From positions 2,480,001-2,544,000 of the forward strand of contig CAJFCJ010000001.1 of the NCBI GenBank assembly GCA_904063045.1: DNA of 64,000 bases, read 5' to 3'. Positions within the stretch are counted from its first letter, which is position 1, and the number at the start of each line of letters is the position of its first letter. Of the stretch, positions 52,945 through 62,300 are shown piece after piece. This stretch comes from Dimorphilus gyrociliatus. Its lineage: Eukaryota > Animalia > Annelida. The position numbers were made by a program, and so were the translations under genes. The notes beneath the pieces were generated by a model. It was given only the letters and a program-made list of their open reading frames with translations, was not told the origin of the DNA and searched no databases.

Positions 52945-54361
52945 TTATAAATATATAAACAATACAGAACACGAATAACGTTTTGTTGGTTTGTTTGTCC
53001 ATAAGTATGGATTGACTTTGTTACAATGAAATAAGCGTTGTAAAGGTAATTTCCATAATCCAAGGAAGTATTTTTCACCAGAACCATCGTTTATAGCGCA
53101 ACTTGGCGGTATTAATTCGAATGGTGAAATTTCTAAATTAACTGGTCTATATCTACCAGGATTGTCATTAAGTGAAAGTTCTGAATTTTTTTCAAGAGTT
53201 GAGAAGGTTGTCATGAGTGCATAATCAGCTTTCATTGAGGAAATGTGTTTGAATACTTTATTAATGTCTCTATAATATAAATTTTGAAGAACCATTCTGA
53301 TGATAATTAGATTGAATTTACCATAGAAAGGTGCTTCAACTATATCGTGTTGTGTAAAAATCCATCCTTCCGTTGGGTACATTTGCTTTAAAGATCTTAT
53401 TAAATTGAATACAATATCAATGCAAGTGTATTCAATATCGTGTCTGGTCTTGAGATATTCAGACATCCAGACCATATCACCACAGCCAATATCCAATACT
53501 TTCACGACTTTTAAACCGCTTTCTGCCTTTAATTTATTGATTATATTATCCAAGGCGGGAAATATATATTTTTTAGTCCAACTCAGAGTTGAACCTTCTC
53601 CAGACGATGAAAAATCACTGCTAGCTTCCCATTTTCCCCATATTTTTTCTTTCCATATTTTAGTAAAATTATTTTGTCGACTTCTGCTTGATTCTCTAAT
53701 TTTACCAATGTTTTTCCTTGAATTTTTAAAACTCTTTGTAAAAGGATTAGGAGTGTAAGTAGAAAGGATTTTCTCATTAGTACAATGTTGTAAGTATCCG
53801 TCCTGTTTTAAAATATGCCTTGAATTTATATCATTCTCTTTCAATACCTTTTTCGCTTCTTTAATTATGTTATATTCCATATTAGATAAGCTTTTTGGAC
53901 TGTTTAAATCCTCTTTTTGACGATCCATCCATCTTGATCCAACTTTTTGAATGTCAATTCGAAAAATGCCCAATTTAGGAGTAGTAATTATTTGATCGTG
54001 TTCAAGATTTACTATAATCTTTTGAAGAGGGTGTTCGCTACAATCTTGACCTGTATAGGAAAATAAGTGTTCAAATAACAAAGATGTAGGCGCCATGTTC
54101 TCTCTTACACCTGTTTCTTCAGGTATTTACTCTTTATTTGTACGATATTTATTAATAATGAAATATTCATTTGAAGTTATTCTATTTATATTAATTAAAC
54201 TATCTTAGTTTACTGTAGTTTGCAATAACTTTGACAGACTATTAAGTTCAGTTGTTTAACTTACCTTCTGGACATTCCGGTTTACTATTCCATAGGTATA
54301 TAATCAGTATAATTGTAAAGATTATAGTGACCTTTAGAATCTTTGTCATATTCCTTTTCAT
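52945..54361 (-). CDS. Type II membrane class I SAM-dependent methyltransferase; exon 1 54361-54265 (TM anchor), exon 2 ~54110-52945
   Basis: Exon 1 MKRNMTKILKVTIIFTIILIIYLWNSKPECPE ends at a perfect donor GAAG|gtaagt. Exon 2 has SSSGEGST, motif I VLDIGCGD, YTCIDIV, HDIVEAP and LIIIRMVLQNL. Confidence 0.75.
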
Positions 54362-54663: not shown

Positions 54664-56401
54664 TTAGCTAAGATCAATTTGTGAACGTAAAACTTGAATC
54701 TCTTCTCTTTGACTTTTGATTATTTCAATTAATGAATTAGCTGTTTTATAGTCGATCGTTTGGTTCGATCCGTTTGAAATATCAGTTTCAAAGAAAAAGT
54801 TATTAGAAAGTAAATACTTTGCAGAAGGCCTATTTTCAACTTTAGGACAAGTCATGTTTAAGATCATTTCACTAATTAACGGAAAATTCTTTCTGATATC
54901 TTCTGGTAGTTGTCTTTTCTCTTTAAGTTGAATAACCTTATCAATTAATTCGTGTTGGGAGGAAATAGAACCAAATAATTGAAAACAAATAATGCCAAGG
55001 CTAAATATATCGCTGGAAAAGTTATATTTAGAGGTATTAGTCTCAGGAGCTGCATATAGGGCACTTCCAACATACGAGGTTAAGCAAATCTCGTCCTGAT
55101 AGGTTTCATTTAAATCTCTTGCCAAACCAAAATCTCCTAATTTAACTACGATGTTTGTCTGATCACCAATCGTAAATATATTACTCGGTTTAATATCTCT
55201 GTGCATAATATTCTTATTATGTATATGATTAAGAGCGGATAAAATATCTTTAATTATCTTCATTTCTACTAAGCCTGGAGAGGATGTACGATCTCTTCCA
55301 TCAATCCAATCTGCTAGGGTACCATTACAATATTCCGTTTGTATGTACATGCATAAAAACGGCAATGGAGCTGGAGATTTCCAGCTTCCAATGGACGATA
55401 GATCATCAGAAGAGCAATAAAGTGTATCTAAACTTGAAGGATTATTCTCAATTTCCAACCAAGCGGTATAATAACGTACAATATTTGTTGGTTGGCATCT
55501 AGCCAATTGAGAAACTTCCCTTAACGTCTTTTATAATAAATTTTAATTATTCATTACAAAACAGATTATTATTAATTTAAAATGTTCTATTTACATTTCG
55601 AATGACCGTCTCGTCTGAATCGTCAAAATATATTTTAACTCTTTTAACCGCATACGTTTCATTATCAATTTTCTTTTCGACCTAAATTAATTAATTAACT
55701 ATTATTTTAAATAAATAAAAAGAAGTATTAATTAGAAAACATTCTATATATAAACCTTAAAAACTTTTCCATAACCTCCTTGACCTAATTGTTTAATTAT
55801 TCTAAAATCTCGTTGAAATTCTCCAGTTTTCTTTGGGAAATTACTTGTAAATTCTTTTAGAATGAACCGATAGACTTTAATTTTCTTTTCTGAACTTAGT
55901 GCTACACTACTTATAGCCTTTTTCGATAGGTCGATAATAGGTAGTTCATCTAAATTTAAGGGAAATATATAGAGATATACGTTTAATTTTTATTTCAACA
56001 GTTTATATTACTTTTATATTTTAATATTTTAAAATTCCATTTCTGGAGGAGTACTTCAGCTGATACGCATTCCTTAGCTATCTTTTTATTCGAACCGAAG
56101 CCCTATAGTACGAAATTAATAATCTATTAAAAAAAATGACGTAAGCTATAGTTATATAGCCAACCTTGTAAGTTGTTTTTCCTATTTGTATAGTTATTTT
56201 TATAGATTGTTCCTTAAATATTCCAACTTGTTCAGGAGAGCTAAAGGCAATGTTACTTCTTATTAACTTCAATATTTTTGATGGTTTAACATATATTCCC
56301 GATTCGTGATCGGAAGATGTTCTTCTACTACTCCGATTTGTGTCTGTAATTCTTTCTTCGGTTGGAGAATCAATCACTAAAGTGAGGAGTTTCTTAAACA
56401 T
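54664..56401 (-). CDS. dsRBD-containing eIF2alpha kinase, paralogue 2 (about 490 aa); exons 56401-56165, 56102-56012, 55949-55756, an 87-nt exon, then the last exon to 54664
   Basis: dsRBD KPSKILKLIRSNIAF...SIKITIQIGKTTYK|GFGSNKKIAKECVSAEVLLQKW. Kinase motifs LGQGGYGKVFK, YAVKRV, REVSQLARCQPTNIVRYYTAW, insert, MYIQTEYC, HRDIKPSN, KLGDFGLA, GSALYAAPE. Short C-terminal coiled coil. Confidence 0.88.
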
Positions 56402-56626
56402 TTTGAATAAGAATGCCTGTATTTGTCAAAATAGGAAATTCTTGAATCTAAAATAGATTACACTTTAGCTACACAGTAGATCATATACTGTATATTAAAT
56501 AGTATTGAGATACCTGAACAGCTGATTTTAATATTAATGTTTTGAATGATAAGAATAAGAATATGAATATTCAAGCTTATTTGTAATATTCAACAATTTT
56601 CCGTTTATTAATCGAATCAAATCTAA

Positions 56627-58503
56627 TTAAATATTCATTAGTTTAGTTTTTTGATGGAATTTTTTTAATTCCCTTATACATTCTTTTAAATATGCAATTT
56701 CTTCAGATTTTTCCTTACACTGTATAGCATAAGTCTCCAAATCAATTTTATCGATGTGGTTTTCTTCTAATTCAACTGTTAAACTTGAAATCTTTTCCTT
56801 TAAACTAATAATTTCCTTATCTTTCTCTTCTATTGTAGCTTTAAGTCTTGTAATCTCTTCACTTTTTTTCTTTACACCAGAGAAGACATCTAAAAGTAGT
56901 ATATCTTTAGCCATAGGTCTTTTATCAGCATCCTTATCAGTCATGTCCTCAACGAGTTTAACGACGGCTGGATGGTTGTGTAGTAGGCTTTCTGGTAATT
57001 TCCCATTAGTTTTAAGATTATTGATAATTGCATAAAATTCATGTGCAGTTGAAATATCAGAAAATAATCGTACAGCAATAATACCAAGACTGAATATATC
57101 ACTTGAAAAGTTATATTTTCCTGTTTCTATTTCAGGTGCAGCGTACGGTTGAGTCCCTACTGCTGAAGTTAATTTACTCTCGTCATCGCATTCGTGTAGT
57201 TCTCTAGCTAAACCAAAATCTCCTAATTTAACCTTTACTTCTTTTGATTTTTCAACTGTAAATACATTATTAGGTTTGATATCTCTATGTAGAATGTTTT
57301 TATTATGAAGATATTCAAGTGCTTTAAGCAAATCTTTAAATATTCCCAATTCAATTTGATAGTTATACGACTGATATATAGTCCTATTTTCAATCCAATT
57401 GTTCAAATTACCACAACATAATTCAGTTTGAATGTATAGATTTAGAGAAGGTATCCTTTCATTTAATCTTTTCCTTCTATTAGCCTGTTCGGTTGAGTAA
57501 TCGGAACTTGAACCGGTATTACTAAAAATTGATGATGGAAAAGTGTTATATAGCGTTTCTTTTGTAACAATTTCCAGCCATCCTTTATGGTATGTTAATA
57601 TATTTTTGTGTTTGCAATCGGCCAATCTTATAACTTCGTCATATTTCTAAAAATAAAATATACACATAATTAATTAAAAATCTTAATTGATTTAACTAAT
57701 TAATAGTTATAATAGTAATAATAGAAAGAAGACTGTATTTTTTATACTTTTCTAATAATTTCACTATCAGAGTCATAAATTCTCATATTTATCATTTTAA
57801 TAGCATAAGATCCTTTATCAAATTTATTCTGTGCCTGCAAGAATACATTATAATTAATTAATAATATAGTTAATTAATTACAAAGATATTTGCAGTGTAT
57901 ACCTCAAAAACACTACCGTACGATCCACTACCCAAAGGCTTTCTAATGTCAAAGTTCTGTTGTATATATCCATTGTCAATACGAAGACTCTTTGTAAAAG
58001 TTTCTAGAATAAAGCTATGAAATTTCTCATTAGCTTCTAAAGGTAGATTGATTTTATCTAATGTCTCGTCCGATAAGATTATTTTCGGCATTCCGTCTGT
58101 TTGTCACGATGAATTGTTTTAAGGTTTTCGTTCTCTTTTTTTATGTTTTTACTACCTTCTCCTGGTTTAAATGTAAAATTCCATAATTCATGTAAAGCTT
58201 TTGCGGCTGTAGTTTCTTTAGCCAACAACTTTGTCCTTCCGCATGCCTTAGAGATAAGGGTTATTGAATATAATTATATTTAAATCGTATAGAGAAAAGG
58301 GAAAAAGTAACCTGAAAGCAATTTTTGTCTATTATTAGTTTCGCTTCTACTTTATCATCGCCAGATCCTTGGATTCTTTCTACATTTTCGAACTTTGCAC
58401 CAGGTTTTATTCTATAAAGAATATTTCTCGGTGTTAATTCAAATTTAGAAGATTTACTCGATTGTGAACTTGAAGATGTTGATCCTCTGCTATATCTACT
58501 CAT
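56627..58503 (-). CDS. dsRBD-containing eIF2alpha kinase, paralogue 1 (about 527 aa); exons 58503-58312, 58246-58156, 58096-57903, an 87-nt exon, then the last exon to 56627
   Basis: dsRBD TPRNILYRIKPGAKFE...VEAKLIIDKNCFQ|ACGRTKLLAKETTAAKALHELW. Kinase motifs LGSGSYGSVFE, YAIKMI, DEVIRLADCKHKNILTYHKGW, insert, LYIQTELC, HRDIKPNN, KLGDFGLA, GTQPYAAPE. Long C-terminal coiled coil. Confidence 0.88.
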
Positions 58504-59349: not shown

Positions 59350-62300
59350 TTACGTATTCACTGATTTCTTTTCATCTTTAAGTTTAAATATACTCCAAAT
59401 TTCACCAGTAGAGTATATGAAGGGATTTAACAATGGATTTAAAGGAATTACAATTATTATAAACCACGGATATATCGAATTATTCAGTGTTATTTGATTA
59501 ATAGTAACCAAAAATCCTATTTATATTTTTTATGTTTGAATTAATTGTTTGTATTTCTTTAAATAATGAAATTTATTCAAACCTAAAATGGAAACTGGTA
59601 GCCAGCACATCATATTTGTACTTACAATTATAAACGCTGTAATAGCAACTTTTTGTTCAGATTTCTTACCACTTTTATTAATTTGTATCCTTGATTTTGT
59701 TACAGTAAGAAAGATTCTCAAATAAAGAATTAACGTTAAAACGCATAGCATAACTGTAAAGATACTGAAAAAGAAGAAAGAATATTCCCAACCTTTCGCT
59801 CTTTCATTTGTTAAATGTATAGAAATGCAAACTGGAGTTCTCGAAAAATAATTCTATTATATAGATATATAGGTTTGTCAGTGATAGGAGATATATACTG
59901 TATGTATTATTGTAATAGACCTACTTCAAAGAGAAATATTGGAAAGATACCAATGGTTAAAGATATACAAAATCCAATAAGAGTACATCCCAATATCGTT
60001 CGATGAGAGATATTCCTATGATAAAAAGGATGACAAATTGCTAAATATCTTTCAAATGTTGTAAAAAAAACGCATAAATTTGATAGAAATACTGAAGTTG
60101 AGGCGACAATTCCGCAAAAATTACACAGATAACTAGATTTCCATGAGAAATCATGATCAATATAAATATCCGAATAATATAAATCAATGGAAGCGATTAT
60201 TATTAAATAAATATTGAATGAAAAATCAGATAAATTTAATCCAATACTAAACCATTTAATCTTTTTTCCTTGACTTTTAACTGATAAATTCAAGTAGAAA
60301 CTTATTGAATTTCCAAAAATACCAAATATAATAATAATCCATATTGAATATTTTAAAAATTTTGTACCAATTAAATCTTTACAACTTTTAAAAAGTGATG
60401 TTTTTGGACTGCAAAATTTTAAATTTGGACAAAATTTTTGACTAAAACAACAAAGTTCAAAATTATTTGATATTAAAATCTCCAATTTTTTTAAATGTTT
60501 TATTAAATTTGATGTAAGATTTTGAGGTAAATTTGAATGATTTAAAAATATCATTTCAACACTTTCAAGATTGTTGAATGAATTTAAATTTATATTTAAA
60601 AGATTTAATTTCATTAGTTTAAGGATTTTCAACTTTTTAAGTTTCATTAAAGTATCTTTTCTTAAGATTGATATCTTTATTTCAGATATATCGAGATATA
60701 ATAGATTTATAATATATTCAAATGAATATTCATTCAATAATTCAATAGGATTATTGTTAATATAAAGATATTGTAATTTTAAATATTTATCCTTATCTAG
60801 TATCTTAAAACCTTTTAGACGGTTATAACTGACGTCTAAATAGACTAGATTAATTGTTTCTAGTTTTGGTAAGTTTTCTATTGAATTTAACGAAATGTTT
60901 AGAAATGTAACGAATAGAGGAGTTTGAATGATAAGTTTTTGATGAATTTTCATTGAATGAACGCTAATCATTCTCACTTGGGAAGGAATAGTTAAATCAT
61001 TATCAAACGTATCGTCAACACGACAAACTAATTGTTGAGGATAATTAGAAATACAAATTGATGATGAATAATTAGTATAAATAGATTTAAAGATGAAACA
61101 ATAAGATTCGTCGTCTCCTTTTAAACAATCAATTTTTAAATCGCAAACTTGATCTAGATTCAGATAAATGTTTGTCAATTTACATTTAAAATAACCTTCC
61201 GGTTGAAAATTCTCTATATTTTATGAATAAAAACAAGAGATAATTTATTATTATTATACATATTATTGATAAGAGAAATACCGCAATTAATTTCATCATC
61301 TGCGTATAAACAATGCGATATTCCATCGCAAATGTACTGAATTGGAATACAATATTTCACGTACATGCATTGATATTGTTTCTTTTGACATGTAAAATTA
61401 TTACAATTCTTTAGATCATCAAATGGATAATGAGGTTTCGTCATTAACCTCCGTTTTGAAGTATATATTACATTACATCTTCTTTCGGATCTTATTATTG
61501 TACTTTTAAGGACATTTTGTATTTCTTCTTTTTCGCATCTCTTACTTTGTTCCCTTCTAAAAATATATAGAATAGATAATTAATTAATTAATTAATTAAT
61601 AATAATAGAACAGTTTAAACAGTTTAAACAGTTTCTTTTTACTCGTGTGAAAAATAACGTTCGTATGTTGTATTTATTAGACGTTTCTCTAGAATTTCTT
61701 TACAACTTTTCGGATCTTCGTCGTCGAATTGAAAATTAACGCAATCCGATTTAAAATCGCAAATAATCTCATCGTTAATGCAATCTCCATCGCAATATTT
61801 TGTACAATCTTTACAAATTTCGTCAGTATTATCCATACAGTTTTTTTCATTATCGCATATTAAAGATTTATCTATACATCTACCATCTTTGCATTGAAAT
61901 CTGTTAATAAATTGAAATTTAGCAAATCGAGTAAATAATACGAAAATAATTATGATGATAAACTTTTCTTTAGTTTCGCATTGAAATACTAAAAATGTAA
62001 AGGATCTTAATTATTTTATTAATTATAGAAGGAAATGAGTCTATTACAGCATTCACTTTCATCACTATCGTCGGGACAATGACTCACGTGATCGCAAACA
62101 AGATTTACACTAATGAAATGATTAGAAGAGCATTGAAATTGATGATTATAAGAGCAATCATGTTCATCAGTTCCATCGGGACAATCCACAACTTTGTCGC
62201 ATACAAATAAATAGTTAATACAAATTTTATCCAACTTACAGAAAAATGTATTTTTAGAACAAAAATTTGATTTTATTTCCATATTTGGAAAAGTAGGAAA

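What the first reader, a model, noticed from the sequence alone, without database searches (positions are those of the whole stretch)
54664..58503. Tandem pair of PKR-like (dsRBD + eIF2alpha kinase) genes in an invertebrate
Seen: the ORF track shows only the kinase cores. Splicing the small 5' exons reveals an N-terminal dsRNA-binding domain in both copies (P.xIL..I.P/S...F, beta-strands, then G/CGxxKK/LxAK...A..L..W), resembling ADAR/ILF3-type dsRBMs. Both genes have the same exon plan: a phase-0 intron inside the dsRBD just before the GxxKKxAK motif, then exons of 91, 194 and 87 nt, which indicates a tandem duplication. All catalytic motifs are intact, plus the eIF2alpha-kinase hallmarks (insert between subdomains IV and V, [LM]YIQxExC). 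Established: dsRBD plus eIF2alpha kinase is the architecture of the antiviral sensor PKR/EIF2AK2, classically regarded as vertebrate; PKR-like sequences have been reported in some molluscs, so novelty needs checking. Inference: a dsRNA-triggered translational shut-off (antiviral) system in this lineage.
Basis: partly seen in the sequence, partly recalled or inferred. Interest (0 to 1): 0.9.

Follow-up and report, generated by a model that had tools for sequence, protein, structure and literature searches.

The report
Annelid look-alikes of antiviral kinase PKR
Two neighbouring, expressed genes of the tiny marine worm Dimorphilus gyrociliatus each join a double-stranded-RNA-binding domain to a kinase of the family that shuts down protein synthesis; this is the design of the vertebrate antiviral sensor PKR, but it was assembled independently, and its function has not been tested.

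Summary
On the minus strand lie two five-exon genes, A (58503-56627, 527 aa) and B (56401-54664, 490 aa). They share the exon plan x/91/194/87/y, and a phase-0 intron splits the N-terminal domain just before the GxGxxK(K)xAK motif. One transcriptome contig splices out all eight predicted introns exactly.

The window is Dimorphilus gyrociliatus. The public model DgyrCDS653 wrongly fuses A and B into one protein.

The kinase domains have every catalytic motif and the eIF2alpha-kinase hallmarks. Their only strong matches among solved structures are PERK, HRI, GCN2 and PKR.

The N-termini are divergent dsRBDs:
- Each scores below Pfam's cut-off on its own.
- Both match profiles built from clear dsrm paralogues.
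- Both fold as alpha-beta-beta-beta-alpha, and every top structural match is a dsRBD.

The genes are not PKR orthologues. They belong to an expansion seen only in D. gyrociliatus and one unidentified relative (at least 11 kinase units in this genome). An AU test rejects grouping this clade with PKR (p 0.007) but not with HRI (p 0.076).

The A/B duplication is old, because the relative has an orthologue of each.

dsRNA activation and eIF2alpha phosphorylation are inferred only, and both dsRBDs lack two of the three canonical RNA-contact motifs.

Other first-stage notes of this scan flagged the same family in neighbouring DNA.

The parts
56627..58503 (-). Gene A: five exons (58503-58312, 58246-58156, 58096-57903, 57834-57748, 57646-56627), 527 aa. 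Domains: dsRBD, linker, eIF2alpha-kinase-type domain, C-terminal coiled-coil-like tail.
   Evidence: Splice model and translation. All four introns are skipped in RNA contig X2. 99.8% identical to residues 1-512 of DgyrCDS653.
58181..58431 (-). Gene A dsRBD (residues 25-86), split by the 65-nt phase-0 intron 58311-58247.
   Evidence: AF2 pLDDT 85.8 with alpha-beta-beta-beta-alpha topology. The top 50 PDB matches are all dsRBDs. Scores 21.8 bits against an independent dsRBD profile, while the best of 2000 shuffles scores 6.3. Pfam Dicer_dsRBD E 0.004 and dsrm E 0.12.
56882..57953 (-). Gene A kinase domain (residues 143-443). The beta4-beta5 insert is residues 216-258 (57565-57437).
   Evidence: Pfam Pkinase E 5.9e-33 on the last exon. 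All 19 PDB matches with E<1e-20 are PERK, HRI, GCN2 or PKR. Motifs seen in the alignment.
56630..56863 (-). Gene A C-terminal heptad-rich tail (about residues 449-527).
   Evidence: Weak hits to several coiled-coil families. Its start aligns with the segment that follows the kinase domain in HRI sequences.
54664..56401 (-). Gene B: five exons (56401-56165, 56102-56012, 55949-55756, 55681-55595, 55527-54664), 490 aa, same architecture as A.
   Evidence: Splice model. All four introns are skipped in RNA contig X2. 99.4% identical to residues 508-992 of DgyrCDS653.
56037..56284 (-). Gene B dsRBD (residues 40-101), split by the 62-nt phase-0 intron 56164-56103. The KKIAK motif is intact.
   Evidence: AF2 pLDDT 82.9 using a family-only alignment. 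The top 50 PDB matches are all dsRBDs. Pfam dsrm E 0.0025, 18.8 bits. Scores 17.3 bits against the profile of the D. gyrociliatus dsrm paralogues, while the best shuffle scores 9.5.
54796..55806 (-). Gene B kinase domain (residues 158-447). The insert is residues 229-262 (55452-55351).
   Evidence: Pfam Pkinase E 2.7e-34. Motifs seen in the alignment.
56448..56513 (-). Extra 66-nt GT-AG intron in the 225-nt spacer between A's stop codon and B's ATG. It is spliced out in the RNA contig that runs through both genes.
   Evidence: Joint 56447/56514 in X2. AATAAA at 56609-56604, downstream of A's stop codon on the coding strand.
56377..56679 (-). The 303-nt in-frame GT-AG 'intron' that the public annotation (DgyrCDS653) uses to fuse A and B into one 992-aa protein. 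The RNA contig does not use it.
   Evidence: Comparison of P0121 with A and B. Coordinates. The X2 contig keeps A's stop codon.

Best explanation
A and B are two adjacent genes of Dimorphilus gyrociliatus.

Each encodes one divergent N-terminal dsRNA-binding domain, a linker of about 55 residues, a catalytically intact kinase domain of the eIF2alpha-kinase family, and a C-terminal coiled-coil-like tail.

They belong to an expansion of such kinases seen only in D. gyrociliatus and one unidentified relative. It has at least 11 kinase units on one 3.6-Mb contig, several of them with clear Pfam dsrm domains. The expansion arose independently of vertebrate PKR, probably from an HRI-like ancestor.

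Proposed mechanism, inferred by analogy with PKR:
1. The dsRBD binds double-stranded RNA.
2. Binding brings two kinase domains together. The C-terminal coiled coil may help.
3. The activation-loop Thr that corresponds to PKR Thr446 is autophosphorylated.
4. The kinase then phosphorylates eIF2alpha Ser51 and stops translation initiation, as an antiviral or stress response.

Shown here: gene structure, expression, domain architecture, family placement, and non-orthology to PKR.

Inferred only: RNA binding, activation, substrate and biological role.
For: - Gene models: clean splice models, confirmed intron by intron by an RNA contig.
- Kinase family: every PDB match with E<1e-20 is PERK, HRI, GCN2 or PKR.
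- Named sequence matches: apart from the paralogue DgyrCDS664, the top matches of full-length A are EIF2AK1/HRI, and the first 50 or so rows are all HRI-type.
- Motifs: all catalytic motifs are present, with the beta4-beta5 insert, L/MYIQTExC, the T-x4-G-T/S activation loop and a Thr (A) or Ser (B) at the position before helix alphaG.
- dsRBD, sequence: independent profiles score A at 21.8 bits and B at 13.7, against at most 6.3 and 9.1 for 2000 shuffles each. The profile of bona fide dsrm paralogues scores them 19.7 and 17.3. The three best Pfam hits of A's N-terminus are all dsRBD families at the same residues, and B's best hit is dsrm.
- dsRBD, structure: AF2 models have pLDDT 85.8 and 82.9 with alpha-beta-beta-beta-alpha topology. 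All 50 best PDB matches of each model are dsRBDs.
- Paralogues: DgyrCDS664 and DgyrCDS663 carry Pfam-significant dsrm (46.8 and 59.4 bits) plus Pkinase and lie in the same cluster.
- Overall design: language-model features of full-length A lie nearest to chordate PKR clusters (score 0.97).
- Conservation: orthologues of both genes, with the same exon plan and a conserved K(K)xAK helix, exist in a related species.
- Independence from PKR: the family forms its own clade (SH-aLRT 90-93). An AU test rejects family+PKR (p 0.007) but not family+HRI (p 0.076).
Against: - Neither dsRBD reaches Pfam's dsrm cut-off alone (13.4 and 18.8 bits against 23).
- A profile built only from vertebrate and mollusc dsRBDs does not separate B from shuffled sequences (4.6 bits).
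- Both domains lack the loop-2 GPxH histidine and the helix-1 glutamate that contact the RNA minor groove. A has KLLAK in place of KKxAK.
- There is one dsRBD per protein, whereas PKR usually has two.
- The AF2 alignments contained true dsRBDs, which biases the models towards that fold.
- The family sits on long branches. In two of the trees it falls outside all four canonical eIF2alpha-kinase families, so keeping eIF2alpha as the substrate is not guaranteed.
- No binding, activity or induction data exist.
Confidence: 0.55

Rival explanations
1. A and B are eIF2alpha kinases, but their degenerate dsRBD is not a dsRNA sensor. It serves as a dimerisation or protein-protein module (a 'type B' dsRBD), or it binds a particular structured cellular RNA. 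The kinases would then respond to other stresses, as HRI does.
For: Both domains lack the GPxH loop and the helix-1 Glu, and A has lost the second Lys of KKxAK. There is only one dsRBD. The nearest named kinases are HRI, which dsRNA does not activate. The Pfam scores are sub-threshold.
Against: B keeps KKIAK, and A keeps the first and last Lys of the motif. The helix is conserved in the orthologues of the related species. Paralogues in the same cluster have fully canonical dsRBDs with GPDH and KKxAK, which suggests that RNA binding is the ancestral role in the family.
Confidence: 0.25
2. A and B are one gene, as annotated (DgyrCDS653). It would make a 992-aa protein with two dsRBD-kinase units, either through the 303-nt in-frame intron 56679-56377 or as a functional bicistronic RNA.
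For: One RNA contig runs through both genes and splices an intron in the spacer. The public model fuses them with canonical GT-AG sites that keep the reading frame. Two-unit models are also annotated for the paralogue DgyrCDS663.
Against: The RNA contig keeps A's stop codon and its own spacer intron, so the RNA form seen encodes two separate ORFs. An AATAAA lies 18 nt after A's stop codon. B has its own ATG and 5' leader. In the related species another kinase gene lies between the A and B orthologues. A contig that spans two genes does not prove a single molecule. The genome paper reports no operons (PMC7854359).
Confidence: 0.1
3. The kinases have left the eIF2alpha-kinase function. They would phosphorylate another substrate, so the resemblance to PKR is architectural only.
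For: The family sits on long branches and is placed outside the four canonical families in the LG+G4 and C20 trees. Evolution is fast: the A orthologues are only 39% identical. Pseudokinase paralogues exist, for example DgyrCDS655.
Against: All strong PDB matches are eIF2alpha kinases. The family-specific insert, the LYIQxExC motif, the activation-loop pattern and the pre-alphaG Thr/Ser are all retained.
Confidence: 0.1

Closest known systems
PKR / EIF2AK2 of jawed vertebrates
   Same: N-terminal dsRBD followed by an eIF2alpha-kinase domain. The activation-loop Thr is at the position of PKR Thr446, and there is a Thr/Ser before helix alphaG (position mapping from memory of PKR, read on the alignment). 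Language-model features are nearest to chordate PKR clusters. Both families occur as tandem gene duplicates.
   Different: Not orthologous: the kinase domains lie outside the PKR clade, and the AU test rejects a joint clade (p 0.007). One dsRBD instead of the usual two, and a divergent one (no GPxH). A C-terminal coiled-coil tail is present. Published work places PKR-group proteins only in jawed vertebrates (PMC11305385).
HRI / EIF2AK1
   Same: Best named sequence matches over the kinase domain, E 1e-41 to 1e-30. Similar activation loop (TSxVGTxxYAAPE), an alphaG region with the G(K/Q)LPE motif, and a coiled-coil-like segment after the kinase. The AU test does not reject a clade with HRI (p 0.076).
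   Different: No HRI2_3H (PF22949) or heme-binding N-terminus; a dsRBD stands there instead. The ML trees do not place the family inside HRI. The annelid HRI of Lamellibrachia groups with other HRIs, not with this family.
Pomacea canaliculata 'EIF2AK1-like' XP_025115876 (kinase plus C-terminal dsrm)
   Same: This snail protein and a near-identical second entry from the same species were the only other non-vertebrate proteins in my searches that combine an eIF2alpha-kinase-type domain with a Pfam dsrm (35.9 bits).
   Different: Its dsRBD is C-terminal, not N-terminal. Its kinase does not group with the Dimorphilus clade. It looks like a further independent fusion.
PKZ of fishes (Z-alpha domains plus a PKR-type kinase)
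   Same: An example of a nucleic-acid-binding domain swapped onto an eIF2alpha-kinase core.
   Different: PKZ nests within the PKR clade and uses Z-alpha domains (PMC11305385). The present genes use a dsRBD on a non-PKR kinase.

Membership tests
eIF2alpha kinase family (EIF2AK1-4) | Intact Ser/Thr kinase catalytic motifs | tested here: met
   GxGxxG, AxK, alphaC Glu, HRDIKPxN, DFG and APE are present in A and B. Pfam Pkinase E 1e-33 to 1e-34.
eIF2alpha kinase family (EIF2AK1-4) | Closest sequence relatives are eIF2alpha kinases | tested here: met
   All 19 PDB sequences with E<1e-20 are PERK, HRI, GCN2 or PKR. Named database matches are EIF2AK1.
eIF2alpha kinase family (EIF2AK1-4) | Insert between beta4 and beta5, followed by the LxIQMExC-type strand | tested here: met
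   Inserts of about 43 residues (A) and 34 residues (B), followed by LYIQTELC and MYIQTEYC.
eIF2alpha kinase family (EIF2AK1-4) | Phosphorylates eIF2alpha on Ser51 | not testable with these tools
   Needs a kinase assay or the yeast S51A suppression test.
PKR / EIF2AK2 (orthology) | Kinase domain falls within the PKR clade | tested here: not met
   The family forms a separate clade. AU test of family+PKR: delta lnL 57.6, p 0.007.
PKR / EIF2AK2 (orthology) | N-terminal dsRBD(s) upstream of the kinase | tested here: met
   One dsRBD in each of A and B. PKR typically has two.
PKR / EIF2AK2 (orthology) | Activation by dsRNA | not testable with these tools
   Biochemical assay needed.
HRI / EIF2AK1 | HRI-type N-terminal region (Pfam HRI2_3H, PF22949; heme-binding domain) | tested here: not met
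   No PF22949 hit in P0121 or in its N-terminal parts, whereas HRI matches carry it.
HRI / EIF2AK1 | Kinase domain groups with HRI | tested here: inconclusive
   Not recovered in the ML trees, but the AU test does not reject it (p 0.076). HRI gives the best pairwise scores.
dsRBD (Pfam dsrm PF00035 and clan) | Score above Pfam's gathering cut-off | tested here: not met
   A scores 13.4 bits and B 18.8 bits against a cut-off of 23. A also hits Dicer_dsRBD at 18.1 against 26. The fused model P0121 reaches 23.9 only by summing the two domains.
dsRBD (Pfam dsrm PF00035 and clan) | alpha-beta-beta-beta-alpha fold | tested here: met
   AF2 pLDDT 85.8 and 82.9. The Foldseek top 50 of each model are all dsRBDs, with TM 0.6-0.74. 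Caveat: the alignments contained dsRBDs.
dsRBD (Pfam dsrm PF00035 and clan) | Homology to bona fide dsrm domains | tested here: met
   Profiles that exclude A and B score A at 21.8 and B at 13.7 bits. The profile of the Pfam-positive paralogues scores them 19.7 and 17.3. The 2000 shuffles each reach at most 9.5.
dsRBD (Pfam dsrm PF00035 and clan) | Three RNA-contact regions (helix-1 Glu, loop-2 GPxH, KKxAK) | tested here: inconclusive
   KKIAK is intact in B, and A has KLLAK. The loop-2 His and the helix-1 Glu are absent in both.

The most novel reading that the evidence does not exclude
dsRNA-triggered shut-off of translation by a dsRBD-eIF2alpha-kinase fusion evolved at least twice in animals. 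A miniature annelid with one of the smallest animal genomes built its own PKR analogue, probably on an HRI-like kinase. It then expanded the gene into a cluster of more than ten diversifying copies, including pseudokinase and two-unit forms, as expected of an arms race with viruses.
Probability: 0.4. Interest if true: 0.8.

Novelty: new variant of a known kind. Interest (0 to 1): 0.66.

Why it matters
PKR is regarded as an innovation of jawed vertebrates. A 2024 phylogenomic study found no PKR-group protein outside them (PMC11305385).

An independently assembled dsRBD-eIF2alpha-kinase in an annelid would have three consequences:
- It would show that this sensor-effector design is a recurrent evolutionary solution.
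- It would give a natural comparison for working out which features of PKR are needed for dsRNA activation.
- It would point to translational shut-off as an antiviral arm in spiralians, whose antiviral immunity is poorly known.

The work also corrects a public gene model, since DgyrCDS653 is two genes. Finally, it identifies an immune-type gene expansion in a genome known for its compaction.

Tried and rejected
- Pfam on single exons gave no dsrm hit, because intron 1 splits the domain.
- The spliced proteins have no reference and I did not type them into tools. I used the public fused model P0121 (residues 1-510 are A; 511-992 are B from its residue 9) as the reference, and did the remaining work on spliced sequences in scripts.
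- The first protein search missed the genome's own model because of the search's length filter. The exhaustive search found it.
- PKR orthology is rejected by the trees and the AU test.
- A recent tandem duplication is rejected, because A and B each have an orthologue in locus L001 of a relative.
- dN/dS between D. gyrociliatus and the L001 species could not be used. dS is saturated (1.3 to over 2, or undefined), so only dN and identity by region are reported. For B, identity is 55% in the dsRBD, 62% in the linker and 75% in the kinase. A is 39% identical overall.
- The careful tree under the C20 mixture model did not finish in the time allowed. I used the quick C20 trees and a careful LG+G4 tree.
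- 'HRI-derived' could not be shown, only not rejected.
- Literature searches for mollusc PKR found only a catalogue entry, 'EIF2AK2/PKR-like', with no domain analysis.
- No paper in the library links Dimorphilus with PKR, eIF2 or dsRNA.
- The species behind locus L001 (Logan assemblies of SRR23372216, SRR23372229 and others) could not be identified.
Full report
**What is in the sequence**

The region is AT-rich (about 29% G+C). ORFs on the minus strand show two kinase cores. Reading the minus strand and joining exons at GT-AG sites gives two complete genes.

- Gene A exons: 58503-58312, 58246-58156, 58096-57903, 57834-57748, 57646-56627 (192/91/194/87/1020 nt; 527 aa).
- Gene B exons: 56401-56165, 56102-56012, 55949-55756, 55681-55595, 55527-54664 (237/91/194/87/864 nt; 490 aa).

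The introns are 59-101 nt long. In both genes intron 1 is phase 0 and falls just before the GxGxxK(K)xAK motif.

**Expression and splicing**

An RNA-derived run (X2) holds about 0.76 of the sampled words of the region, which equals the exonic share. Laid on the window, one 3359-nt contig, 100% identical, skips exactly the eight predicted introns and contains the dsRBD exons.

The same contig runs from A into B. On the way it removes an extra 66-nt GT-AG intron (56513-56448) in the 225-nt spacer, and it keeps A's stop codon. An AATAAA lies 18 nt after that stop codon.

The contig therefore shows continuous RNA coverage across the spacer. That fits either a read-through RNA or an overlap between A's 3' UTR and B's first, non-coding exon. 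A contig cannot tell these apart. The genome paper reports no operons or trans-splicing in this species (PMC7854359).

**Identity of the genome and the public annotation**

An exhaustive profile search found a 992-aa protein, DgyrCDS653 of the annelid Dimorphilus gyrociliatus (CAD5111339.1).

- Its residues 1-512 match A at 99.8%.
- Its residues 508-992 match B at 99.4%.
- The public model is thus a fusion of the two genes. It uses a 303-nt in-frame GT-AG 'intron' (56679-56377) that the RNA contig does not use.

No paper in the library links Dimorphilus with PKR, eIF2 or dsRNA.

**The kinase domains**

- Pfam Pkinase matches both last exons (E 6e-33 and 3e-34).
- Against all PDB sequences, every match of A's kinase region with E<1e-20 (19 sequences) is PERK, HRI, GCN2 or PKR.
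- With full-length A as query, the paralogue DgyrCDS664 comes first. The named matches after it are EIF2AK1/HRI from fishes, insects, molluscs, tunicates and echinoderms (E 1e-41 to 1e-30).

An alignment with HRI, PKR, GCN2 and a PERK-like sequence shows:
- all catalytic motifs in A and B;
- an insert of about 43 (A) and 34 (B) residues between beta4 and beta5, followed by LYIQTELC and MYIQTEYC;
- an activation loop LTSAVGTQPYAAPE (A) and LTSYVGSALYAAPE (B), with a Thr five residues before the G-T/S, as at PKR Thr446;
- a Thr (A) or Ser (B) before helix alphaG;
- a heptad-rich segment after the kinase that aligns with the one in HRI.

The PKR residue numbers come from my memory of the PKR literature. 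The pattern itself is read from the alignment.

**The N-terminal domains**

Scanned alone, A's N-terminus gives Dicer_dsRBD (E 0.004), DSRM_2 (E 0.084) and dsrm (E 0.12, 13.4 bits), all at residues 30-85. B's gives dsrm (E 0.0025, 18.8 bits). Both are below the cut-off of 23 bits.

Three further lines of evidence support a dsRBD.

1. Profiles built without A and B.
   - A profile of 13 dsRBDs scores A at 21.8 and B at 13.7 bits. The best of 2000 shuffles of each scores 6.3 and 9.1.
   - A profile of only the three Pfam-positive D. gyrociliatus paralogue domains scores A at 19.7 and B at 17.3 bits (best shuffles 7.7 and 9.5).
   - A profile of only vertebrate and mollusc domains scores A at 13.0 bits (significant) but B at 4.6 (not significant).
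2. AlphaFold2 models.
   - A residues 18-100, with a 17-row alignment: pLDDT 85.8.
   - B residues 31-110, with a 9-row family-only alignment that contains no vertebrate PKR: pLDDT 82.9.
   - Both have alpha-beta-beta-beta-alpha topology.
3. Foldseek against the PDB. All 50 best matches of each model are dsRBDs. The best are ILF3 DRBM2 and ADAR2 dsRBM2, at 28-30% identity for A.

Caveats:
- The alignments given to AlphaFold contained true dsRBDs.
- In the alignment both domains lack the loop-2 GPxH histidine and the helix-1 glutamate.
- B keeps KKIAK, while A has KLLAK.

The fold and the homology are therefore well supported. RNA binding is plausible but not assured.

**The gene family**

D. 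gyrociliatus carries further members on the same 3.6-Mb contig.
- DgyrCDS655 is a pseudokinase. It lacks GxGxxG and has HKD and NFD in place of HRD and DFG.
- DgyrCDS656-659 and 662 are more than 90% identical to one another.
- DgyrCDS663 is modelled with two dsrm and two kinase domains (59.4 bits dsrm).
- DgyrCDS664 has dsrm (46.8 bits) plus a kinase.
- A gene with several dsRBDs lies beside them.

Only A and B are inside this window.

A Logan contig from an unidentified relative (L001) holds four family kinases in a row. I modelled two of them.
- An orthologue of A, with exons 198/91/197/87/948 nt, is 39% identical to A.
- An orthologue of B, with exons 3 and 4 fused, is 65% identical to B overall and 75% in the kinase.
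- Both keep the K(K)xAK helix.

In the trees A pairs with the first and B with the second (SH-aLRT 91 and 100). The A/B duplication therefore predates the split of the two species. dS between the species is saturated, so dN/dS is not usable.

**Relation to PKR and HRI**

I built trees of kinase domains with Myt1/Wee1 as outgroup: 58-116 units, using FastTree, IQ-TREE quick with C20, and IQ-TREE careful with LG+G4.

- All trees recover a clade of the D. gyrociliatus sequences plus their unidentified Logan relatives (support 90-95).
- All recover a separate vertebrate PKR clade (97-100).
- The backbone is unresolved.
- The annelid HRI of Lamellibrachia groups with other HRIs, not with this family.
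- An AU test rejects family+PKR (delta lnL 57.6, p 0.007). It does not reject family+HRI (delta lnL 21.8, p 0.076).
- No HRI2_3H domain is present.

The family is thus not PKR. An HRI-like origin fits best but is not shown.

**How unusual the architecture is**

In my searches, kinase plus dsrm outside vertebrates appeared only in D. gyrociliatus and in two near-identical Pomacea canaliculata entries, where the dsRBD is C-terminal. Language-model features of A lie nearest to chordate PKR clusters, and all the dsrm+Pkinase clusters listed are chordate.

A 2024 study of 246 genomes concluded that PKR-group proteins are absent outside jawed vertebrates (PMC11305385). A mollusc immunome paper lists 'EIF2AK2/PKR-like' only as a catalogue item.

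**Verdict**

The most likely function is a dsRNA-responsive eIF2alpha kinase that evolved convergently with PKR. Shown: gene structure, expression, domains and phylogenetic independence. Inferred: RNA binding, activation and substrate.

The main rival is that the degenerate dsRBD acts as a dimerisation or specific-RNA module on a general stress kinase.

Noticed in passing
window 56448-56513 (-) and 56377-56679 (-): The RNA contig links genes A and B through a spliced 66-nt intron in the spacer and keeps A's stop codon. The public model DgyrCDS653 instead fuses the genes through a different 303-nt in-frame GT-AG intron. It is unresolved whether read-through, bicistronic or fused isoforms exist. 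The genome paper reports no operons.
   Followed up: partly
L004 10001-10462, 16060-16494, 13470-14780; L004 2002-2675: The dsRBD intron position differs within the family. A, B and their orthologues are split at beta3/alpha2. DgyrCDS663 and DgyrCDS664 are split at alpha1/beta1. The second dsRBD of the neighbouring multi-dsRBD gene is split at the A/B position. This could mean separate dsRBD acquisitions, or intron gain and loss.
   Followed up: partly
P0198 / P0393 (Pomacea canaliculata XP_025115876 and a second entry): An HRI-like kinase of a snail carries a C-terminal Pfam dsrm (35.9 bits). No other mollusc in the hit list has this, so it appears to be another independent kinase-dsRBD fusion.
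   Followed up: partly
P0250 (DgyrCDS655), outside the window: This family member has no GxGxxG loop, and has HKD and NFD in place of HRD and DFG. It is a likely pseudokinase within the cluster.
   Followed up: partly
L001 1257-2805 and 5109-6207: The unidentified relative (Logan SRR23372216) has two further family kinase genes, one on each side of the A orthologue. One of them lies between the A and B orthologues and is absent from that position in D. gyrociliatus.
   Followed up: no
window 59350-61178 (-): ORFs of a leucine-rich-repeat, LDLa-type (LGR/GRL101-like) GPCR lie just upstream of gene A. Other notes of this scan describe such receptors with kinase-like tails elsewhere in this genome.
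   Followed up: no
window 52945-54096 (-): A 383-aa ORF lies downstream of gene B. Another first-stage note reads it as a membrane SAM methyltransferase. I did not examine it.
   Followed up: no
P0133, P0134, P0139, P0143 (Folsomia candida and unnamed Logan proteins): A strongly supported, long-branched clade of two-kinase-domain proteins without dsrm, one of them from the springtail Folsomia candida (the others are unnamed), appears among the eIF2alpha-kinase-like hits. UniRef names the Folsomia protein 'Interferon-induced, double-stranded RNA-activated protein kinase', but it has no dsRBD.
   Followed up: no
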